DNA of 64,000 bases, taken from the IMG/VR virus record IMGVR_UViG_3300043418_000114, positions 300,248-364,247 of that record; one strand, given 5' to 3'. This document shows, piece by piece, positions 57,362 to 64,000 of this stretch. Both the position numbers and the translations under genes were made by a program. Under the pieces are notes generated by a model. It saw only the letters and a program-made list of their open reading frames with translations, made no database searches and had not been told where the DNA came from. Numbering within the stretch: the first letter of the stretch is position 1; every line of letters starts with the position of its first letter.

Positions 57362-60300
57362 ATGCTAAGAGATGTATTTTATTATGGGAAGAAACCTAAC
57401 GTTCATCCCAGAGAAAAGTTTGCAATAAATTTAGATGATGCCAAGCGGCAATCATCCACTGAACACTTCTGGATCATAAACGAGTTTTGTGACTATAAGG
57501 GATTTGACTGGGACTTTGATTTTGAATTCTTGCCTGACGAAGATGTGTGGGCAGAAGAACACAATAACGTATGGCCAAGTGTACATCAAAAAGATAGTGG
57601 CACGTGGCTATGCAACACTGATAACAACGAAGCATTGACAATTTATCGTGCCGATGTTGAACCACTAAAGCGTAAAAAAGAAGCATTCGATCACTGGGTA
57701 GTTAACTATGCTATCACAGATGGGTTTGATTTTTCATGGCATCATGACCCGTCAGATCCACCATTCATTTATGTTTGGGGTAATCAATTTTACCCTGGGA
57801 CAGTTATGCCAACAGTTGAATATCATGTTGAAGGCGCAACTGAACGCAAATACATGGATTTGTTTGTGCCTACATTAGCACAGAACAAAGATAGATTCGA
57901 AGTACTAGACGATATTGAAGATTTTGATTATAGTTGGATGCCAGATCCAACTAGTCCACCCTACATTTACGTATGGGGCAATCAATGGAACTCAGCAGAA
58001 GATAAAGCGGCTATAAAATATACAGTCGAGGGCGCGACTGAATACAAGTATATGGCTACACGTGCAAAACGTAGAGCTAATATGCAGTATTGGACCGTGC
58101 CGGATAATGTTGATGTTAGTGATTTCGATTTTAGTTGGGAACCTAACCCTCATGATCCACCATTCGTGTATCAATTCGGCACTCAGCACCAACGCACGGG
58201 TGGCCCTGTTTATACTATTCCAGGAGCAACAGAAGTTAAGTACGTTGATGTAATTCATGCAATGGCTCCTGTTGATATGACATATTGGCACGTGCCAGAC
58301 AATCTAAAAATAGTTGACTTCGACTTCTCATGGCATCCAGATGCACTAGACGGGCCATACATTTATGTTTTTGGAACACAATGGGCACTGACTGGTGGTC
58401 CAAAATACGTAGTGCCAGGCGCAGATCAAAAGAAGTACATTGATGCAATCATTGCCACTGTGCCACCAAACCTAGCTAACTGGGAAATTCCTACTGATAT
58501 TGCAGTAGATGAATTTGATTTCTCATGGCATCCATACGAAGATGATGAGCCCTACATCTATCAGTTTGGCACTCAGTGGCAGAAGACTGGCGGCCCACGT
58601 TACGTTACACCTGGTACTGATGAAATGTCTCCCATCAAATATGTAGACACTCGCATTATCAAAGCTAGAAAACTTCCTAAGCGTGATAACTGGACAGTGC
58701 CAGATACCATTGAAGAAGACAGTATTGATTTCTCATGGCATCCTGATGACACTGAACCAGCATTTGAGTATCAGTTTGGTACTCAATGGCAGAAGACAGA
58801 TGGTCCAGTTTACACCGTGCCAGGTGCAACACAATCTAAGTTTGTATCAGTCAACAAAGCACGTATCAAACCTAACATGAGTAATTGGCAATTGCCAGAG
58901 GGACTTGATGCTAAGAAGTTTGACTTTTCATGGCACCCTGACAGCACAGTTCCTGTATATGTTTACCAGTTCGGTACATTACTAGATGATATTCACCTAG
59001 AAGACGGCCCACGTTATGTAACACCTGGCAATGATGGTCATGTTGTGTACATGGAAAACGACGAGATTCTTACTGATGCCATCGAATATCCAAAGTACTA
59101 TATCACAACTACATTAGATGATTTGATTCAGCAACACAAAGATGAAACATTCTGGGCGTTACGTGAAAACATTGATTACGCTGATTTTGATTTTGCATGG
59201 AGACCTACGAAAGAAAACGTCTTCCACATTAACGCATTTGGTTCACCTGATAGCGAATCAACTCAGTCATATCTTGTCAATGGCAAGATGATTCAGCAAG
59301 GTCATTCTCATATCAATTTCATCGAGAATATTAAGCTAGACGAAGAATACTTGGCCAAATTGTTTAAGCCAGTTAGTATGTTCTTTGTTGATCGTGGTAA
59401 CAGTGAAACCCAAGAACGATTTGATAGATTGAAGCTACGTTTCCCTGACATTCAAAAGACTAGATTCTTGAACACATGGGTAGATACAATCAACCGTTGT
59501 ATCAATCGTAGTTCAACTGAATTGTGCTGGATTCTGAACAGCGAACTTGACTATAGCGATTTCAACTTTGAGTACTATCCTAATCCATGGCAAATGAAAA
59601 TGGTCCACGTGTTTGGTACTCAATGGTCTCATTGGGGCACAACGTTTATGGTCAATCGTGATTCGTTTGCAGAAGATACCAAGTACATTAAAGTCATTGA
59701 ACACTTGAGTAACTTGAACTTTGTAAAGAATCGCAGAGCAAAGGCCACTAACGTTCTATATGACGTTATCTACATTGATCATGGCACTACCGATATTACT
59801 CCTGGCACAAACGTAATTGTGTATGAAGATAGCTATCTCACAACGTTCAAAAAGATGTTGGAGAAGTTACCTACAAAGAAAGAACACTATGTTTGGGTTT
59901 GCTCAAGCGTATGTGATTATGCTGACTTTGATTTCACTTACATTTGTGATCCATTTGCACGTGAGCAATTGCACGTATTCCCTAGTGACAAACAAAAGTT
60001 TGGCGATACATTCTTAATCAACGTAAACAAGTTGCGTGAGTTGATTACGGACATGGAGAAACTAGAAGATTACGAAAAGATCAGCTATAACCAGCACCAA
60101 AGAGCAAAGCGATTGCCTGCTCCAACTATAATTACAAAGGAAGATACACATGTCTCTACTATTCACACTGATTTTAATTGGCCTTATGCTACGTTTGTCA
60201 CGGAAGACAACGCCGAAATAGAATCTGTTTACTCAGAACCAATGAGCCTATGGGCACCTGAACACAAGAATATCACAATCACCAGTACCGGCGGCACTCG

Positions 60301-61066
60301 CATTGTTGTACCGCGTGAGGCCAAAGAACATGTTAAGCGTGAATTGTATGATTACCCATACATCATCACCAATAGTAAATTGGCTAAGTCTACACCAATG
60401 GACATTGTATTCTTGTCGAACGGCGAGACAGGAGCAGAGGAAAACTATGAGCATTTGTTGAAAACAACACATGGATTAGCCAATCGTGTTGTTCGAGTCG
60501 ATGGAGTTAAAGGTCGTGTTCAAGCGTATCATGCCGCACTTGAAGCAAGTAACACACCTTGGGCTTTCACAGTCTTTGCGAAGTTAAAAGTCAGTAACAA
60601 ATTTGATTGGAACTGGCAACCAGATAGACTACAGATTCCTAAGCATTATGTATTTCATGCTAAGAATCCGGTGAACGGACTAGTCTATGGTCACCAAGCA
60701 ATGATTGCCTATAACAAGAAACTTACACTTGCCAATCAAGGCAAAGGTCTAGACTTTACAATGGACGATGAACATGAAGTTGTTGAAATTGTCTCAGGTG
60801 TTGCAAACTTTAATACTGATGAATGGTCAACCTGGCGTACTGCATTCCGTGAAGCACTCAAACTACGTGCTAACACAGACGAAGTAAGTAAGAATAGACT
60901 AGAGTTTTGGCTAACAGTTGGGTCAGGTAAGTTCTCTCAGTATAGTATTGATGGAGCATCTGACGCAGTTAAGTACTATGAGGAAGTCAATGGAGATTTT
61001 GAGAAATTGAAGTTGAGTTATGAATGGGAATGGCTACGCGAATTCTATCAGCGCAAGTATAAATAA
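57362..61066 (+). CDS. 1234-aa repeat protein with a C-terminal glycosyltransferase-like domain
   Basis: Seven tandem ~66-aa FDFSWxP repeats; C-terminal DIVFLSNGE..A..N, RVDGVKGR..AYH, NPVNGLVYG and WRTAFRE motifs shared with 34489-35445. Confidence 0.65.
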   Translation: MLRDVFYYGKKPNVHPREKFAINLDDAKRQSSTEHFWIINEFCDYKGFDWDFDFEFLPDEDVWAEEHNNVWPSVHQKDSGTWLCNTDNNEALTIYRADVEPLKRKKEAFDHWVVNYAITDGFDFSWHHDPSDPPFIYVWGNQFYPGTVMPTVEYHVEGATERKYMDLFVPTLAQNKDRFEVLDDIEDFDYSWMPDPTSPPYIYVWGNQWNSAEDKAAIKYTVEGATEYKYMATRAKRRANMQYWTVPDNVDVSDFDFSWEPNPHDPPFVYQFGTQHQRTGGPVYTIPGATEVKYVDVIHAMAPVDMTYWHVPDNLKIVDFDFSWHPDALDGPYIYVFGTQWALTGGPKYVVPGADQKKYIDAIIATVPPNLANWEIPTDIAVDEFDFSWHPYEDDEPYIYQFGTQWQKTGGPRYVTPGTDEMSPIKYVDTRIIKARKLPKRDNWTVPDTIEEDSIDFSWHPDDTEPAFEYQFGTQWQKTDGPVYTVPGATQSKFVSVNKARIKPNMSNWQLPEGLDAKKFDFSWHPDSTVPVYVYQFGTLLDDIHLEDGPRYVTPGNDGHVVYMENDEILTDAIEYPKYYITTTLDDLIQQHKDETFWALRENIDYADFDFAWRPTKENVFHINAFGSPDSESTQSYLVNGKMIQQGHSHINFIENIKLDEEYLAKLFKPVSMFFVDRGNSETQERFDRLKLRFPDIQKTRFLNTWVDTINRCINRSSTELCWILNSELDYSDFNFEYYPNPWQMKMVHVFGTQWSHWGTTFMVNRDSFAEDTKYIKVIEHLSNLNFVKNRRAKATNVLYDVIYIDHGTTDITPGTNVIVYEDSYLTTFKKMLEKLPTKKEHYVWVCSSVCDYADFDFTYICDPFAREQLHVFPSDKQKFGDTFLINVNKLRELITDMEKLEDYEKISYNQHQRAKRLPAPTIITKEDTHVSTIHTDFNWPYATFVTEDNAEIESVYSEPMSLWAPEHKNITITSTGGTRIVVPREAKEHVKRELYDYPYIITNSKLAKSTPMDIVFLSNGETGAEENYEHLLKTTHGLANRVVRVDGVKGRVQAYHAALEASNTPWAFTVFAKLKVSNKFDWNWQPDRLQIPKHYVFHAKNPVNGLVYGHQAMIAYNKKLTLANQGKGLDFTMDDEHEVVEIVSGVANFNTDEWSTWRTAFREALKLRANTDEVSKNRLEFWLTVGSGKFSQYSIDGASDAVKYYEEVNGDFEKLKLSYEWEWLREFYQRKYK
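57695..59070 (+). repeat. Seven tandem ~200-nt coding repeats (W.VP....FDFSWHPD...PYIYQFGTQWQKTGGP.Y.VPGA...KY)
   Basis: Visible in the protein, and in the DNA as recurring tt(c/t)tcatggca and tttggcactcagtggcagaagac-like strings; boundaries are approximate. Confidence 0.85.
61058..61065 (+). promoter_or_regulatory. Perfect T4 late promoter box TATAAATA
   Basis: Exact consensus, 4 nt upstream of ATG 61070. Confidence 0.7.
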
Positions 61067-61069
61067 TTG

Positions 61070-61162
61070 ATGATATACTTTTGGATAATTATCGCCGTCG
61101 TTGTTGGAGCTGGCATCTACTGGCTCATGGACTGGCAATCACATCACGAGGACGGTGAATAA
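61070..61162 (+). CDS. 30-aa single-pass membrane peptide (MIYFWIIIAVVVGAGIYWLMDWQSHHEDGE), absent from the ORF track
   Basis: Fills the gap exactly; has a ~19-residue hydrophobic stretch and an acidic tail; late box upstream. Confidence 0.6.
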   Translation: MIYFWIIIAVVVGAGIYWLMDWQSHHEDGE

Positions 61163-61729
61163 ATGCGCTTTAGTGAAATACTATCAGAATTGCGTGGCAT
61201 CAAAGGCGATGTAGCTCACCTTGAACCCGATGCAGGACATGAGTCCTGGGAAGAACTATTATCACAGCATGGATTTCAGCCAATTGGCAGAGGCTATCAT
61301 GGTCAAGTCTATCGTAATCCAAAGTTACCATATGTACTGAAAGTCTTTACTAAGCAAGACGTTGCATATCAGCAATGGGTAAAAGATTGCAAGGGACCAC
61401 TACTTGGTAATCCTTATGTTCCAGTGTTTCGTGGTGATGTAACGAGACTAACACCTGATGCAGTGGCCATTCGTATGGAAACACTTGAACCAGCATCACT
61501 CAAGCAACTTGAACTTGCTAGACAAATTCAAAGTATGCTATTGAGTAGCAGACGAGAAAAACGTGATTGGACGACATATTCATTGGCCAAAGAAATGGAT
61601 GATAGTCTATTTGAGGCAGTTAGTTACATCCAGTCAGAAGCTACCAAACACAATTACATGTTAGACATGCGTGGCGCAAACGTCATGCAACGGTCAGGTC
61701 AGCTGGTAATTATTGACCCATTAGCTTGA
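61163..61729 (+). CDS. Minimal protein-kinase-like (PKL-fold) protein
   Basis: IGRGYHGQVY Gly-loop, YVLKV lysine, DMRGANVM catalytic loop and IIDP (DFG-equivalent). Confidence 0.7.
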   Translation: MRFSEILSELRGIKGDVAHLEPDAGHESWEELLSQHGFQPIGRGYHGQVYRNPKLPYVLKVFTKQDVAYQQWVKDCKGPLLGNPYVPVFRGDVTRLTPDAVAIRMETLEPASLKQLELARQIQSMLLSSRREKRDWTTYSLAKEMDDSLFEAVSYIQSEATKHNYMLDMRGANVMQRSGQLVIIDPLA

Positions 61730-61754
61730 CTTTTAAAATAAAAAGATATATACT
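61726..61754 (+). promoter_or_regulatory. Sigma70-type promoter of the tmRNA gene
   Basis: TTGACT (61726-61731), 17-nt spacer, TATACT (61749-61754); predicted start near 61761. Confidence 0.8.
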
Positions 61755-61760
61755 ATTGAG

Positions 61761-61825
61761 AACAGCGTAAACTGTTATTAAGAAAAGTGTTCTGGGCGCG
61801 GGTTCGACTCCCGCCAGGTCCACCA
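61761..61825 (+). ncRNA. ssrA: Two-piece (permuted) tmRNA, acceptor piece
   Basis: GCGGG-TTCGACT-CCCGC T-arm followed by CAGGTCC-ACCA; TGTTCT pairs with AGGGCA of the coding piece; the 5' end is inferred from the promoter. Confidence 0.88.
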
Positions 61826-61837
61826 TAAGGAAGTTTA

Positions 61838-62044
61838 ATGAGTCGTAGTAGTCCGTGGTTAAGTAAAGATAGTCCAAAAACTCTCAAGGAGTTTTGGATT
61901 GAACTACACCCAGATTGGGTAGAGATTGATGGTCAGAACTTAACTGAGGATAGATGGAACGACATTAAACCAGAGACAATGGTTGCCATGAAGCGAGAAT
62001 ATGTTAAGTGTTCTGAACTTCTTGGTTGGCAAGTTTCTTTATGA
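61838..62044 (+). CDS. 68-aa hypothetical protein encoded inside the tmRNA intervening segment
   Basis: TAAGGA SD immediately after the CCA with a 6-nt spacer; the ORF spans 207 of the 220 intervening nt; its stop ends one nt before tmRNA G1. Confidence 0.6.
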   Translation: MSRSSPWLSKDSPKTLKEFWIELHPDWVEIDGQNLTEDRWNDIKPETMVAMKREYVKCSELLGWQVSL

Positions 62045-62045
62045 T

Positions 62046-62226
62046 GGGCCTGCCATGGTTTCGACAGGGCAAAGAGTAGGGATAATGGCGCTCGGCAAGG
62101 TAGAAGCCGTAGGATTGGGGGAACCCGGTCGAAGACAACAAAAAACTTAAATGCAAACGATTCCGTTTTCGCATTAGCGGCCTGATAACCGCTTAGGGTA
62201 AGACATACCTCGTAACAGAAACTCAG
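62046..62226 (+). ncRNA. ssrA: Two-piece (permuted) tmRNA, coding piece; tag (A)ANDSVFALAA at 62153-62185
   Basis: GGGCCTG pairs with CAGGTCC, giving the G3-U70 alanine determinant; GGTTTCGAC D-loop motif; TTAAAT-GCA resume context; tag ends in ALAA then TGA TAA; the 3' end is approximate. Confidence 0.92.
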
Positions 62227-62251
62227 AACCCGCTTCGGCGGGTTTTCTTTT
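62227..62251 (+). terminator. Rho-independent terminator after the tmRNA
   Basis: AACCCGC-TTCG-GCGGGTT followed by TTCTTTT. Confidence 0.9.
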
Positions 62252-62298
62252 GTCAACGTAACGTAAGGCTGATACGTTGTATATGTATAGGAGCTAAT

Positions 62299-62445
62299 AT
62301 GCTAAACACACTATGCAATCAAGAGAAGCCAGGTAAAAACGAGAAAAATTACTTTTTCTCCGAGCGTTTTCACTATAATAAAAACCCAGAATGTGATAAG
62401 AAACGCACTACCCCATATCGAACTTCACCGATTAACTTGAAGTAA
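62299..62445 (+). CDS. Possible 48-aa hypothetical protein, absent from the ORF track
   Basis: AGGAG SD at 62289-62293 and ATG 62299 (MLNTLCNQEKPG...PINLK); no other support. Confidence 0.35.
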   Translation: MLNTLCNQEKPGKNEKNYFFSERFHYNKNPECDKKRTTPYRTSPINLK

Positions 62446-62540
62446 ACTACTACTTTCTTCATAATAGAAAAAGATTCGTGATACATGTCACAGTCTAAAT
62501 AAAAATCTATACTCGAAAGAGTTTAACAAAAGGAAATTAA

Positions 62541-63092
62541 ATGAAGAAAATTTTAGCAATCTTGGCTCTTGCCACATTCGGTTCTGCTTTCGCCGCAGAT
62601 TTTGTCGCTGTTGACGTTGACAATGTTCAAGGTCGTAAAGGCGCATCTGACAGCACAGCACAATATGTTCGTGCAGGCAAAGGCTTCGGAGACTATCAAT
62701 TCAACTTGCAATCACGCACTGCTACTGTTACCGGTGGTGGTTTGTTGAATAGCATGGAAGTCACAGCCGCTAAGAACTCTGTTAACGTTGCGGGTATCAC
62801 TCCATTCGTTGGTGTTGGTCATGACAACGGTTTCAACGGCGCTCGTAGTGCAGGTTACAATTATGGCCTAGTTGGTGCAACTTATGGTCGCCCAGTTGGT
62901 CCAGGCTTCTTGTTGCTAGGTGCAAAAACCCGTGTTGGTTCTACTGAATCAGTTAACACAAAGCAGACTGTTAGTTTCGCTACTTACAGCGTACCAGTCG
63001 CAAAGAATGTTTCTGTGAATTTGAATGCTAGCCGTTCAGCACAGGATATCAAGGAAAAGGCTTTCGGTCTTGGCTTGACATTCGGTTTCTAA
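62541..63092 (+). CDS. Outer-membrane beta-barrel protein (small porin-like)
   Basis: Sec signal peptide MKKILAILALATFGSAFA; alternating amphipathic strands; C-terminal beta-signal FGLGLTFGF ending in Phe; AAGGA RBS; TAAATA box at 62496. Confidence 0.8.
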   Translation: MKKILAILALATFGSAFAADFVAVDVDNVQGRKGASDSTAQYVRAGKGFGDYQFNLQSRTATVTGGGLLNSMEVTAAKNSVNVAGITPFVGVGHDNGFNGARSAGYNYGLVGATYGRPVGPGFLLLGAKTRVGSTESVNTKQTVSFATYSVPVAKNVSVNLNASRSAQDIKEKAFGLGLTFGF

Positions 63093-63112
63093 TCAATTCA
63101 TTTGATTTAACC

Positions 63113-63140
63113 AAAGGCTCTTTACAGAGCCTTTTCTTTT
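63113..63140 (+). terminator. Rho-independent terminator after the OMP gene
   Basis: AAAGGCTCT-TTAC-AGAGCCTTT followed by TCTTTT. Confidence 0.8.
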
Positions 63141-63149
63141 GTCTATAAT
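63121..63149 (+). promoter_or_regulatory. Sigma70/early-type promoter for the tRNA, overlapping the terminator
   Basis: TTTACA (63121-63126), 17-nt spacer, TATAAT (63144-63149); the tRNA starts at 63161. Confidence 0.7.
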
Positions 63150-63160
63150 AAATGCATATT

Positions 63161-63235
63161 GCGCTAGAGGCTAATTGGTATAGCAAGGGTCTCTAAAGCC
63201 TGAGAGAGTCGGTTCGATTCCGGCCTAGCGCACCA
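63161..63235 (+). tRNA. tRNA with CUA anticodon (amber suppressor); amino acid identity unknown
   Basis: Acceptor GCGCTAG/CTAGCGC plus ACCA; D-arm GCTA/TAGC; anticodon loop CT-CTA-AA (anticodon 63193-63195); T-arm GTCGG-TTCGATT-CCGGC. The anticodon stem is weak. Confidence 0.8.
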
Positions 63236-63261
63236 TCTTTAACTTAACGTCAGGTAGTATT

Positions 63262-63477
63262 ATGACAATTGAATCAGCATCTAATTTTTTCATCGGTAGT
63301 ATTTTGTATATGTTAGCAATCGTGGTGATTGTTGCAGGTATCACATTCATTAATAACATCTTGAGCAAGTACTGGAAACCCGTAAAGATTTGGTTGCCTC
63401 ATTATTTCAATGAGCCACAGCGATTCGCAACACAAGAAGAAATGGCAAAGATTGCCCCGACTCTGGACAAAAAATGA
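63262..63477 (+). CDS. Small membrane protein
   Basis: One hydrophobic helix (FFIGSILYMLAIVVIVAGITFI); AGGT RBS. Confidence 0.65.
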   Translation: MTIESASNFFIGSILYMLAIVVIVAGITFINNILSKYWKPVKIWLPHYFNEPQRFATQEEMAKIAPTLDKK

Positions 63478-63752
63478 AAACTTGGTTCTTGCCACCGCCA
63501 TACTCACAAGATGATGTTGAATGGATCAACAACTCTGGTCTAGACTATGATCTTGAGACACCGTATGAAGCGGGTGATAGTGGGTGGTGCGACTATGACA
63601 CTGGTCATCAGATACTAACTAATCAACACAAAATCTACTTGAACACACATACCGATAAAGAAGAAACATGGTTATTGCTCAAGTATGACAACCGAGTTAC
63701 TCTGAGATATCAGAGTCTAACCGACAAAGAATTAGAAAAAGTAAACTTCTAA
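63474..63752 (+). CDS. Hypothetical protein
   Basis: 92 aa; ATGA overlap with the upstream gene. Confidence 0.65.
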   Translation: MKTWFLPPPYSQDDVEWINNSGLDYDLETPYEAGDSGWCDYDTGHQILTNQHKIYLNTHTDKEETWLLLKYDNRVTLRYQSLTDKELEKVNF

Positions 63753-63785
63753 TAAATACATATGACACAACACAAGGAGATAAAA

Positions 63786-64000
63786 ATGTCAAACGAAAAA
63801 ATCCCACGTATCTAGATTGAATACGCATGTAAAGACGTAGTGTTCCACTTTAACAAGGCACACCTCGCAGATCAGACCATTCCAATGTGGGTCTTAAAAT
63901 CACATGGAGAAACCTTTTATGTTAATCATGTGGAATGCAATGTTCCATGGAGTACGAAAGAGACACCAGATAACCCAAGTACAAAAGGTAGCATCAAAGT
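63786..64000 (+). CDS. Hypothetical protein interrupted by an in-frame TAG at codon 10; runs off the window end
   Basis: ATAAATA box at 63752-63758, AAGGAGA SD, ATG 63786; reads MSNEKIPRI-TAG(63813-63815)-IEYACKDVVFHFNKAHLADQTIPMWVLKSHGETFYVNHVECNVPWSTKETPDNPSTKGSIK, open to the edge. Confidence 0.65.

What the first reader, a model, noticed from the sequence alone, without database searches (positions are those of the whole stretch)
61163..64000. Clustered translation-control island: kinase, tmRNA, amber suppressor and amber-interrupted gene within 3 kb
Seen: these elements are adjacent; both RNAs have host-type sigma70 promoters while several neighbouring protein genes have late boxes. Inference: a coordinated module for termination and rescue, in which early RNAs read through UAG and rescue or tag stalled and non-stop ribosomes. 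This could counter host defences that cleave tRNA or tmRNA or stall ribosomes.
Basis: inference. Interest (0 to 1): 0.6.

Follow-up and report, generated by a model that had tools for sequence, protein, structure and literature searches.

The report
Suppressor tRNA gates a phage gene
A 364-kb freshwater phage carries an amber-suppressor tRNA just upstream of a gene whose reading frame is blocked by a UAG near its start. The same pairing recurs in dozens of related phage contigs and in cultured rhizobial phages, so it looks like a built-in translational switch and it identifies the long-missing target of such phage tRNAs.

Summary
Window 61163-64000 contains a kinase-like ORF, a permuted two-piece tmRNA (tag ANDSVFALAA), a tRNA with anticodon CUA, and a gene ("X") with a strong ribosome-binding site, nine codons, then an in-frame TAG.

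The core finding is the tRNA-CUA/X pair.
- In 69 related IMG/VR loci, all 47 distinct X sequences have SD-ATG-(1 to 8 codons)-TAG-A.
- The codons right after the TAG evolve like coding sequence.
- A covariation-supported tRNA-CUA lies on the same strand, usually 40-4700 nt upstream.
- X is the only amber-gated gene in this genome, which otherwise uses the standard code.
- The same leader-plus-tRNA pair occurs unannotated in cultured Rhizobium phage RHph_I1_18.
- A second gated family (PTH2 peptidyl-tRNA hydrolase) has TAG in phage Phosso, which carries tRNA-CUA. It has TGA in Atu_ph07, which carries tRNA-UCA.

The tmRNA is present in every large relative checked, but it lies 1 to 138 kb from X, so its linkage is loose. 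The kinase and the outer-membrane-like gene are not conserved in relatives. T4-type "late boxes" are not enriched.

Verdict: partly supported. What is real is a suppressor-gated leader, a single-codon variant of phage stop-codon recoding. The function of X is unknown.

The parts
61070..61162 (+). 30-codon ORF for a small hydrophobic peptide. Its stop overlaps the start of the kinase-like ORF (TAAATG). It is preceded by one of the window's two TATAAATA motifs (61058-61065). It is not part of the conserved cassette.
   Evidence: Read from the sequence; TATAAATA count.
61163..61729 (+). 188-aa protein-kinase-like ORF (T7 gp0.7 type). Accessory: not found in the flank of any relative.
   Evidence: PHROG 15752 E 1.3e-6. 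Pfam Kinase-PolyVal 15 bits, below cut-off. No relative in IMG/VR by pattern scan. Absent from 69 related loci.
61726..61754 (+). Sigma70-type promoter of the tmRNA gene (TTGACT-17-TATACT).
   Evidence: second-best match in the region.
61764..61825 (+). tmRNA acceptor piece: T arm, 3' acceptor strand CAGGTCC, discriminator A, encoded CCA (61823-61825).
   Evidence: Rfam alignment; sequence.
61826..62045 (+). tmRNA intervening segment, 220 nt against 65-116 nt in most relatives. Its two ends can pair with each other (AAGGAAG with TTTCTTT). It is expected to be removed from the mature two-piece RNA.
61838..62044 (+). 68-codon ORF that fills the tmRNA intervening segment exactly. It starts 12 nt after the CCA and its stop ends 1 nt before the coding piece.
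   Evidence: Homologues at 78-88% identity (P0002-P0006). Two of the three contexts fetched are also nested in ARAGORN-called permuted tmRNA genes of other contigs (L084, L085). In L083 the acceptor and coding-piece flanks are present but ARAGORN calls no tmRNA, and the ORF differs by an in-frame 3-nt indel. An unrelated 65-codon ORF occupies the same slot in L006.
62046..62255 (+). tmRNA coding piece. 5' acceptor strand GGGCCTG, giving a G3:U70 wobble with the acceptor piece. Tag frame 62153-62182 (ANDSVFALAA), stops 62183-62188, terminator hairpin 62225-62246 with a T run.
62541..63092 (+). 183-aa secreted, probably outer-membrane beta-barrel-like protein (signal peptide, C-terminal ...TFGF). 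Followed by a terminator at 63113-63134. Accessory.
   Evidence: Sequence. No Pfam, PHROG or NCBIfam hit. Absent from relatives. No relative in 185,579 genomes by pattern scan.
63121..63149 (+). Sigma70-type promoter of the suppressor tRNA (TTTACA-17-TATAAT). It overlaps the preceding terminator.
   Evidence: best match in the region, 11/12.
63161..63235 (+). Amber suppressor tRNA: anticodon CUA, loop CUCUAAA, G1-C72/C2-G71/G3-C70, discriminator A73, encoded CCA. It stands alone, about 120 kb from the phage's array of 45 other tRNAs.
   Evidence: On 37 homologues the cloverleaf is kept by compensatory changes in 18 of 21 pairs; 0 of 500 shuffles reach the observed values.
63262..63752 (+). Two small ORFs between the tRNA and X: a 71-aa single-pass membrane protein (63262-63477) and a 92-aa ORF (63474-63752). 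They are conserved only in the closest relatives. No terminator was predicted between the tRNA and X.
63774..63815 (+). The gate: SD AAGGAG (63774-63779), ATG (63786), eight further codons, and an in-frame TAG (63813-63815) followed by ATT.
   Evidence: TAG in 47/47 distinct relatives, next codon ATT in 46/47. TAG invariant while the two preceding codons vary at all positions.
63816..64000 (+). First 61 complete codons (plus two bases of the next) of protein X after the gate. The gene continues over the circular junction to G000:C1:503 (L001:3-500 = P0001), about 186 aa in all after the TAG. X has an N-terminal beta domain, a C-terminal ACT/RRM-like domain and an acidic tail. Function unknown.
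   Evidence: The family has 1307 database proteins, many called with TAG=Q.

Best explanation
The phage's own amber-suppressor tRNA acts as a translational switch for gene X, which lies downstream on the same strand.

How it would work: ribosomes start at a strong Shine-Dalgarno/ATG, translate a short variable leader (nine codons here, usually two), and then meet a UAG. Either host RF1 releases a useless mini-peptide, or the phage tRNA(CUA) inserts an amino acid and the conserved 186-aa protein X is made. X output therefore depends on the tRNA being transcribed (from a host-type promoter), processed, charged by a host synthetase, and able to outcompete RF1.

The same kind of leader gates PTH2 peptidyl-tRNA hydrolase genes in rhizobial jumbo phages. 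This links the gated genes to translation quality control.

The two-piece tmRNA is a frequent but movable companion. Its likeliest role is to clear ribosomes that the suppressor drives past UAG stops to mRNA ends.

Shown: the anatomy, the conservation, the synteny, coding selection directly after the stop, and the stop-codon/anticodon match between two phages. Inferred: that readthrough actually occurs, which amino acid is inserted (probably Lys or Gln, from memory of E. coli CUA-suppressor studies), what X does, and the tmRNA's role.
For: 1. TAG is invariant in 47/47 distinct X sequences spanning 46-93% protein identity. The leader before it varies in length and sequence.
2. The nine codons just after the TAG vary mainly at third positions (entropy 0.21/0.25/0.94), like the following coding region (0.40/0.19/0.79). 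No conserved canonical start lies between the TAG and these codons.
3. tRNA-CUA is on the same strand in 42 of 49 non-duplicate loci, mostly 37-4700 nt upstream. In four of the other seven it lies just beyond the flank held (L057, a duplicate of L020, at -173 nt; three at about 8 kb).
4. The tRNA cloverleaf is maintained by compensatory changes.
5. X is the only SD-miniORF-TAG-long-ORF case in the 364-kb genome. TAG ends 31 of 488 ORFs, and the standard code gives 92% coding, so this is not a genome-wide code change.
6. Rhizobium phage RHph_I1_18 has an unannotated leader-TAG-X(N-domain) ORF ending 12 nt before its annotated tRNA(cta).
7. PTH2 genes show the same device. In Phosso the gate is TAG and the phage has two tRNA-CUA and no tRNA-UCA detected. 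In Atu_ph07 the gate is TGA and the phage has a tRNA-UCA and no tRNA-CUA detected. In Phosso the Pfam PTH2 domain begins upstream of the first canonical start; in Atu_ph07 the annotated CDS matches the model only from position 13.
8. Every stop in these gates is followed by A, which I recall as the 3' context most favourable to suppression (from memory, not tested).
9. Gene callers that reach full-length X did so only with TAG=Q.
Against:
- The codon after the TAG is ATT in 46/47 and never ATC or ATA. That would also fit a rare AUU re-initiation codon. However, ACT in L055 and AAC in RHph_I1_18 cannot initiate.
- One relative (L046) has X with an ordinary ATG start, yet its contig still has a tRNA-CUA, so X can do without the gate.
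- Three loci (L009, L022, L068) showed no tRNA-CUA in the sequence held.
- X has no recognisable function. Its N-domain model (pLDDT 94) has no PDB match above Z 3.4.
Confidence: 0.72

Rival explanations
1. Generic accessory or tRNA region. The elements merely share a variable part of the genome and are functionally independent.
For: - Kinase, OMP-like gene and orf48 are absent from all relatives' flanks.
- The tmRNA lies 1 to 138 kb from X in five large relatives.
- In some relatives X sits beside the general tRNA array (L068, L071, L041).
Against: - In this genome the tRNA-CUA is alone, 120 kb from the 45-tRNA array.
- The invariant TAG plus a same-strand tRNA-CUA recurs across phages as different as a 364-kb jumbo phage and a 171-kb T4-like rhizobiophage.
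- Stop type matches suppressor anticodon in Phosso and Atu_ph07.
Confidence: 0.1
2. Start-stop mini-ORF with re-initiation. The leader is a regulatory upstream mini-gene. After termination at UAG the ribosome restarts at the adjacent AUU, and the suppressor tRNA is irrelevant to X.
For: - ATT follows the TAG in 46/47 sequences with no synonymous variation.
- The same ATG-GCA-TAG-ATT leader fronts a different ORF in L046.
- Atu_ph07's TGA is also followed by ATT.
Against: - Re-initiation gives no reason for the stop to be always TAG, or for a tRNA-CUA to be adjacent.
- L055 (ACT), RHph_I1_18 (AAC) and Phosso PTH2 (GTT) lack ATT.
- The switch TAG to TGA coincides with the switch tRNA-CUA to tRNA-UCA.
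Confidence: 0.1
3. Genome-wide code change (code 15-like). TAG is a sense codon throughout these phages, and X is just one of many recoded genes.
For: Public gene callers chose TAG=Q for short contigs carrying X. Phage TAG recoding with suppressor tRNAs is well documented (bioRxiv 10.1101/2021.08.26.457843).
Against: - The standard code gives 92% coding density.
- 31 ORFs end in TAG. The TAG-terminated ORFs with long in-frame extensions simply run into the next gene, which has its own start.
- Only X fits the gate pattern.
Confidence: 0.03
4. The suppressor's main job is elsewhere, for example reading through host UAG stops to disturb host translation, or replacing tRNAs hit by host nucleases. 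The amber codon in X is only a secondary timing or dosage device, or a lock that keeps X silent outside infection.
For: - L046 shows X works without the gate while a tRNA-CUA remains.
- Phosso has two tRNA-CUA genes.
- The tRNA has a strong host-type promoter.
- tmRNA, and in this genome an RF-like rescue or termination factor, accompany it.
Against: The tight same-strand adjacency, often under 300 nt and probably co-transcribed, and the 100% conservation of the gate argue that X is a principal client.
Confidence: 0.2

Closest known systems
Stop-codon recoding in phages driven by phage suppressor tRNAs (crAss-like, Lak and other gut phages; Borges et al., bioRxiv 10.1101/2021.08.26.457843; PMC9523058)
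   Same: A phage-encoded suppressor tRNA, written in standard code and probably expressed early, is needed to translate phage genes that contain in-frame stop codons. This has been proposed as a temporal switch.
   Different: - Here the genome is otherwise standard-code.
- A single gene carries a single stop at a fixed position in a short 5' leader.
- The gated genes are not structural or lysis genes.
- The tRNA sits immediately upstream of its client.
Suppressor tRNAs of jumbo phages XacN1 (CUA) and Atu_ph07 (UCA), whose targets were reported as unknown (PMC5852040, PMC6102473)
   Same: Large standard-code phages of Proteobacteria with big tRNA sets and one or two suppressor tRNAs. Atu_ph07 is one of the genomes analysed here.
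   Different: Those studies looked for extensions beyond 3' stops or only counted stop codons. The targets found here are stops in 5' leaders, which make annotators truncate the gene (Phosso and Atu_ph07 PTH2) or miss it altogether (RHph_I1_18).
prfB (RF2) autoregulation by an early in-frame UGA; arfA regulation by trans-translation (PMC12421855; PMC10107115)
   Same: An early in-frame stop, or the lack of a stop, makes output of a translation factor depend on the activity of the termination or rescue machinery.
   Different: No frameshift is needed here; the frame continues after the stop. It is not known that X acts on termination. The decoder is a dedicated tRNA rather than a slippage event.
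Phage-encoded two-piece (permuted) tmRNAs, e.g. OM43 phage Melnitz and pelagimyophages (PMC9004378); tmRNA database (PMC11915505)
   Same: Permuted ssrA gene on a phage, with an early-type promoter, a tag ending in ALAA, and no phage SmpB.
   Different: The intervening segment is 220 nt and is filled by a conserved 68-codon ORF. The database paper mentions only a tRNA gene or a repetitive element inside intervening segments.

Membership tests
Permuted (two-piece) tmRNA, Rfam RF04321 | Covariance-model score above the curated gathering score | tested here: met
   113.7 bits against 47.
Permuted (two-piece) tmRNA, Rfam RF04321 | Circular permutation: the acceptor piece (T arm, 3' strand, CCA) lies upstream of the coding piece (5' strand, tag frame) | tested here: met
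   CCA at 61823-61825; coding piece from 62046; tag at 62153-62188.
Permuted (two-piece) tmRNA, Rfam RF04321 | G3:U70 wobble in the acceptor stem (alanine identity) and a tag ending in hydrophobic residues plus stop | tested here: met
   GGGCCTG pairs with CAGGTCC, giving G3:U. Tag is ANDSVFALAA followed by two stops.
Permuted (two-piece) tmRNA, Rfam RF04321 | Processing into two RNAs and function with SmpB | not testable with these tools
   No SmpB gene in the phage, so it would have to use the host's.
Nonsense (amber) suppressor tRNA | A genuine tRNA cloverleaf under selection | tested here: met
   37 homologues; 91.6% of cells paired; 18 of 21 pairs with double changes; 0/500 shuffles reach the observed values; shifted-partner controls 33-44% paired.
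Nonsense (amber) suppressor tRNA | Anticodon CUA in a 7-nt loop with U33 and A37 | tested here: met
   Loop YUCUAAA is invariant in all 37.
Nonsense (amber) suppressor tRNA | A conserved in-frame UAG that needs it | tested here: met
   X in 47/47 distinct relatives; PTH2 in Phosso.
Nonsense (amber) suppressor tRNA | Aminoacylation and actual suppression in the cell | not testable with these tools
   Amino-acid identity could not be assigned. There is no close paralogue among the phage's 45 tRNAs (best 66% identity).
Genome-wide TAG-recoded phage (code 15 type) | Many genes with in-frame TAG and low coding density under the standard code | tested here: not met
   92% coding under code 11; one gated gene; TAG used as a normal stop 31 times.
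prfB-type autoregulatory recoding | Conserved early in-frame stop that must be bypassed | tested here: met
prfB-type autoregulatory recoding | Bypass by +1 frameshift, and a product that recognises that same stop | tested here: not met
   The frame continues in phase 0. X shows no release-factor similarity.
Protein kinase (T7 gp0.7-like) | Significant profile match and catalytic motifs | tested here: inconclusive
   PHROG 15752 E 1.3e-6 over residues 28-86 only; Pfam below cut-off; NCBIfam none. A glycine-rich loop with VLK, and LDMRGAN...IDP, are visible in the translation.

The most novel reading that the evidence does not exclude
Suppressor tRNAs of large standard-code phages may be dedicated trans-activators of a small regulon of translation-maintenance genes, namely X, PTH2 peptidyl-tRNA hydrolase, and possibly others. 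Each gene would sit behind a two-to-nine-codon leader ending in the stop codon that matches the phage's suppressor: UAG with tRNA-CUA, UGA with tRNA-UCA.

The gate would act as a checkpoint. It would report whether phage tRNAs are being made, charged and admitted to the ribosome in competition with release factors. That would let the phage sense translational sabotage by the host, such as tRNA cleavage, depletion or stalling, and adjust rescue functions together with its tmRNA.

The conserved UGA inside the phage's RF1-like gene, and the ORF inside the tmRNA intervening segment, would be further parts of the same control layer.
Probability: 0.25. Interest if true: 0.9.

Novelty: new variant of a known kind. 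Interest (0 to 1): 0.8.

Why it matters
Papers on jumbo phages XacN1 and Atu_ph07 state that the genes targeted by their suppressor tRNAs could not be identified. This analysis gives a concrete, testable answer: the targets are stop codons in short 5' leaders, not 3' stops. It also provides cultured systems in which to test this: RHph_I1_18, Phosso and Atu_ph07.

It has a practical consequence for annotation. Current pipelines either skip these genes, truncate them, or wrongly switch a whole contig to code 15.

It also offers a minimal natural example of how stop-codon recoding can begin, with one tRNA and one codon. Such a compact tRNA-dependent switch may be useful in synthetic biology.

Tried and rejected
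- Near-identity DNA search against GenBank phages found no match.
- The kinase has no IMG/VR relatives by pattern scan. The OMP-like gene has no relative in 185,579 genomes, so the host could not be inferred from it.
- X had no hit in Pfam, PHROGs or PDB sequence profiles.
- Fold searches of the full X model and of the N-domain model (Foldseek PDB and BFVD, VIA wide, ESM Atlas) gave only a generic ACT/RRM-like match for residues 85-172 (Z about 5). The N domain scored no higher than Z 3.4. The language-model atlas search scored below 0.9.
- Genome-wide TAG recoding was tested and rejected.
- An initiator-type tRNA reading UAG as a start was rejected from the sequence. The tRNA has a G1-C72 pair and lacks three consecutive G-C pairs in the anticodon stem.
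- The T4 late motif is not enriched.
- The first pattern for tRNA-CUA in cultured phages was too strict and missed the positive control. It was repeated with a looser pattern.
- The RF-like gene does not co-occur strictly with X: it is in 2 of the 6 large (>=330 kb) IMG/VR genomes that carry X and not in RHph_I1_18.
I did not try to obtain it another way.

Full report
**Where the window lies.** The window is the last 64 kb of a 364,247-bp IMG/VR virus record (G000:C1:300248-364247). Its ends repeat 127 bp, which is the overlap of a circular assembly. GC content is 41%. There is no near-identical GenBank phage. The only protein-level hit of the neighbouring 1234-aa repeat protein is to Ralstonia jumbo phage RsoM2USA, at 26% identity. 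The genome has 46 tRNA matches. Forty-five form an array at 225-241 kb on the minus strand. The 46th is the CUA tRNA of the finding, alone and about 120 kb away on the plus strand.

**Checking the observation.**
- ARAGORN and Rfam agree on a permuted tmRNA (61764-62185, 113.7 bits, tag ANDSVFALAA) and on a tRNA with anticodon CUA (63161-63235, 54.9 bits).
- The 188-aa ORF at 61163-61729 matches the PHROG of T7 gp0.7-type kinases (E 1.3e-6), but only weakly matches Pfam.
- The 'amber-interrupted gene' is real. AAGGAG lies six bases before ATG 63786, and nine codons later there is a TAG at 63813-63815. The same frame then runs to the window's end and over the junction for 186 codons.
- The two best sigma70-type matches in the region lie just before the tRNA and the tmRNA. 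Terminator-like hairpins follow the tmRNA and the OMP-like gene, but none separates the tRNA from X.
- The T4 late motif TATAAATA is not enriched: 2 found, 4.3 expected.

**The amber codon is conserved.** A scan of IMG/VR with the C-terminal 166 residues of X returned 69 loci at 46-93% identity.
- In every one of 47 distinct sequences the arrangement is Shine-Dalgarno, ATG, one to eight further codons, TAG, and then the conserved N-terminus. The next codon is ATT in 46 and ACT in 1.
- Only L046 has a plain SD-ATG start.
- Across 44 distinct sequences the TAG never varies, and the two codons before it vary at all three positions. The nine codons after it vary mainly at third positions (entropy 0.21/0.25/0.94), exactly like the coding region further on (0.40/0.19/0.79).
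- That stretch is therefore translated, yet it contains no conserved start codon.
- The word search found 1307 family members. Those that reach the N-terminus have Q at the TAG position, and the two I looked up translate only 'with TAG=Q'. Public gene callers thus met the same codon on many more contigs.

**The tRNA travels with the gene.** ARAGORN plus a loop/T-arm pattern find a tRNA-CUA on the same strand as X in 42 of 49 non-duplicate loci. It is mostly 37-4700 nt upstream, and 572 nt downstream in one clade.
- Of the other seven, one lacks flank; its duplicate locus has the tRNA.
- Three have a tRNA-CUA about 8 kb away.
- Three (two short fragments and G004) showed none.
- Thirty-seven homologues keep the cloverleaf through compensatory changes in 18 of 21 pairs. 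None of 500 shuffles reaches the observed values, and shifted-partner controls fall to 33-44% paired.
- The loop YUCUAAA is invariant.
- The tRNA is an elongator type (G1-C72). It has no close paralogue in the phage's own set. Its amino-acid identity could not be assigned.

**This is not a genome-wide code change.** Under the standard code a simple non-overlapping ORF set covers 92% of the genome. Stops are TAA 258, TGA 199 and TAG 31. TAG-terminated ORFs with long in-frame extensions simply run into the next gene, which has its own start. A scan for SD-miniORF-stop-long-ORF finds X as the only convincing TAG case. I therefore did not apply another genetic code to the genome.

**Independent occurrences in cultured phages.**
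- tblastn of X against GenBank phages hits only four records, through the N-terminal domain.
- In Rhizobium phage RHph_I1_18 (171 kb) the hit lies in an unannotated gap. It reads ATG plus four codons, TAG, then an 80-residue X N-domain. It ends 12 nt before the annotated 'tRNA-Pyl(cta)'. A permuted tmRNA lies 4.3 kb away on the same strand.
- In Sinorhizobium phage Phosso and Agrobacterium phage Atu_ph07 the X N-domain is the C-terminal part of an ordinary CDS. Two genes upstream lies a PTH2 peptidyl-tRNA hydrolase whose annotation is truncated.
- In Phosso the Pfam PTH2 domain (E 3e-20) starts at residue 41 counted from an in-frame TAG, and the first canonical start is at codon 51. Upstream lies AGGAG-ATG-AAG-TAT-TAG.
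- In Atu_ph07 the homologous leader ends in TGA.
- Phosso has two tRNA-CUA genes and no tRNA-UCA detected. Atu_ph07 has a tRNA-UCA, also reported in PMC6102473, and no tRNA-CUA detected.
- So the stop codon of the gate and the anticodon of the phage's suppressor change together.
- L046, the one X without a gate, carries the familiar ATG-GCA-TAG-ATT leader in front of a weak PTH2-like ORF 640 nt upstream.

**What the rest of the 'island' is.**
- The kinase-like ORF, orf48 and the OMP-like gene have no counterpart in any of the 69 flanks. The small membrane protein and orf92 between the tRNA and X are shared only with the closest relatives.
- A permuted tmRNA is present in all five large relatives examined, but at 1, 1, 45, 65 and 138 kb from X. 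ARAGORN finds it within 6 kb of X in about 13 distinct loci.
- The tmRNA is therefore a constant of this phage group and often a neighbour, but not part of the fixed cassette.
- A functional link is plausible on published grounds. Readthrough by suppressor tRNAs sends ribosomes to mRNA ends, where tmRNA acts (Ueda et al. 2002, cited in PMC3985003). This link is inference.
- The phage has no SmpB.

**Protein X.**
- An alignment-based AlphaFold model (pLDDT 84) shows an N-terminal beta domain (1-80), a ferredoxin-like ACT/RRM-type domain (85-172) and a disordered acidic tail.
- Folded alone, the N domain reaches pLDDT 94.
- No PDB or viral-model match is significant. The exceptions are family members and a generic ACT/RRM resemblance (Z about 5). 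The N domain's best Z is 3.4, to OB-like domains.
- The function of X is unknown. Its operon partnership with PTH2 in Phosso, Atu_ph07 and L046 is the only hint that it belongs to translation maintenance.

**Mechanism proposed.** The tRNA is transcribed from a host-type promoter, in many relatives probably on the same transcript as X. Ribosomes loaded at the strong SD translate the leader and reach UAG followed by A. RF1 and the suppressor compete there, and only suppression yields X. The gate thus makes X depend on a working phage tRNA and sets its level by the suppressor/RF1 ratio. The steps shown are anatomy, conservation, coding selection, synteny and stop/anticodon co-variation. The steps inferred are readthrough itself, the inserted residue, the biological purpose, and the tmRNA's role. 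Alternatives and their weights are given under rival explanations.

**Comparison with what is known.** Phage suppressor tRNAs that switch on recoded late genes are established (PMC9523058). This case works like them but fails the defining test of genome-wide recoding. It also differs in placing one stop in a 5' leader of non-structural genes. The XacN1 and Atu_ph07 papers explicitly left the suppressor targets open. Phage two-piece tmRNAs are known. I found no paper describing leader-stop gates, but the library holds only open-access papers and my term searches were few.

**Other things seen.**
1. The tmRNA's intervening segment is 220 nt here, against 65-116 nt in most relatives. It is filled exactly by a 68-codon ORF. 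Homologues at 78-88% identity were found, and two of the three contexts fetched sit inside ARAGORN-called permuted tmRNA genes of other contigs. The third has the tmRNA flanks and differs by an in-frame indel. An unrelated 65-codon ORF uses the same slot in L006. The tmRNA database paper mentions only a tRNA gene or a repeat in such segments.
2. Next to the tRNA array the genome encodes a release-factor homologue that lacks domain 1 and is of RF1 type (PxT and GGQ motifs). It has an in-frame TGA where RFs have a conserved Trp. All 56 distinct relatives with a valid match have TGA at that site, and the frame continues unshifted. No tRNA-UCA was found in this genome.

**Limits.**
- There is no expression or protein evidence.
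- tRNA absence calls rest on a pattern plus ARAGORN.
- Relatives are metagenomic contigs, many of them fragments and some closely related, so counts of 'distinct' sequences are not independent events.
- The host is unknown.

Noticed in passing
window 61838-62044 (inside the tmRNA intervening segment 61826-62045); L006:1494-1691; L084:2216-2422; L085:84-290: A 68-codon ORF fills the excised intervening segment of the permuted tmRNA exactly. Homologues (78-88% identity) were found. Two of the three contexts fetched lie inside ARAGORN-called permuted tmRNA genes of other phage contigs with different tags; the third (L083) differs by an in-frame 3-nt indel. An unrelated 65-codon ORF occupies the same slot in L006. 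A protein gene inside a tmRNA intervening segment appears not to have been described.
   Followed up: partly
G000:C1:221137-221808, minus strand (L088:1435-2106), outside the window: Release-factor homologue of RF1 type without domain 1 (PxT and GGQ motifs), next to the 45-tRNA array. It carries an in-frame TGA (221701-221703) at the position of the conserved Trp of release factors. TGA is at the same site in all 56 distinct IMG/VR relatives with a valid match, and the frame continues unshifted. No tRNA-UCA was found in this genome. The gene is present in only 2 of the 6 large (>=330 kb) IMG/VR genomes that carry X.
   Followed up: partly
L082:1884-2378 (Sinorhizobium phage Phosso PV764938); L081:1932-2381 (Agrobacterium phage Atu_ph07 MF403008); L080:2977-3224 (Rhizobium phage RHph_I1_18 MN988519): GenBank annotations truncate (PTH2 in Phosso and Atu_ph07) or omit (X N-domain gene in RHph_I1_18) genes that begin with a short leader ending in a stop codon matched by the phage's suppressor tRNA.
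   Followed up: yes
L046:5288-5663 and 5937 onward: This is the only relative whose X has a plain ATG start. The usual ATG-GCA-TAG-ATT leader sits instead in front of a weak PTH2-like ORF 640 nt upstream. The contig has a tRNA-CUA of a different sequence type about 8 kb upstream.
   Followed up: partly
L047:3110-3800 and L041:1570-2260: ORFs whose first residues recalled GIY-YIG homing endonucleases when read by eye (no profile search was run) sit just upstream of X, behind what looks like a duplicated copy of the X leader (in L047: ATG, one codon, TAG, ATT GAA TA...). This suggests insertion at the very 5' end of X.
   Followed up: no
window 63146-63159 and 63750-63763: The 14-nt motif TAATAAATRCATAT occurs exactly twice in the 64-kb window: once overlapping the -10 region before the suppressor tRNA, and once just before the ribosome-binding site of X. 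It may be a shared control element or a remnant of the insertion of the two small ORFs between them.
   Followed up: no
L002:3533-3607 (G000:C1:227532-227606, minus strand): ARAGORN reports a tRNA with an eight-base anticodon loop and a four-base anticodon 'tttc' within the main tRNA array. It may be a frameshift-suppressor-like tRNA or a mis-fold.
   Followed up: no
window 57362-61066: 1234-aa protein with about ten repeats of a roughly 65-residue unit (FDFSWHPD...PYIYVWGNQ...GP.Y..PGA). It is conserved upstream of the tmRNA in the closest relatives (L003, L004, L008, L038). It has no family assignment.
   Followed up: no
window 62541-63092: Phage-borne gene for a secreted protein that looks like a small outer-membrane beta-barrel (signal peptide, C-terminal aromatic residue). 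It has its own promoter-like sites and terminator. It has no homologue in profile libraries, in relatives, or by pattern scan in 185,579 genomes.
   Followed up: partly
L008:2754-2900 (tmRNA intervening segment): The 91-nt intervening segment of this relative's tmRNA contains a T-arm-like GGTTCGATTCC element, that is, a tRNA-like fragment inside the segment.
   Followed up: no
whole genome G000: 26 of 258 TAA-terminated ORFs have 80 or more in-frame open codons after the stop, against 5 of 199 for TGA and 1 of 31 for TAG. This is probably same-frame neighbouring genes, but it was not examined.
   Followed up: no
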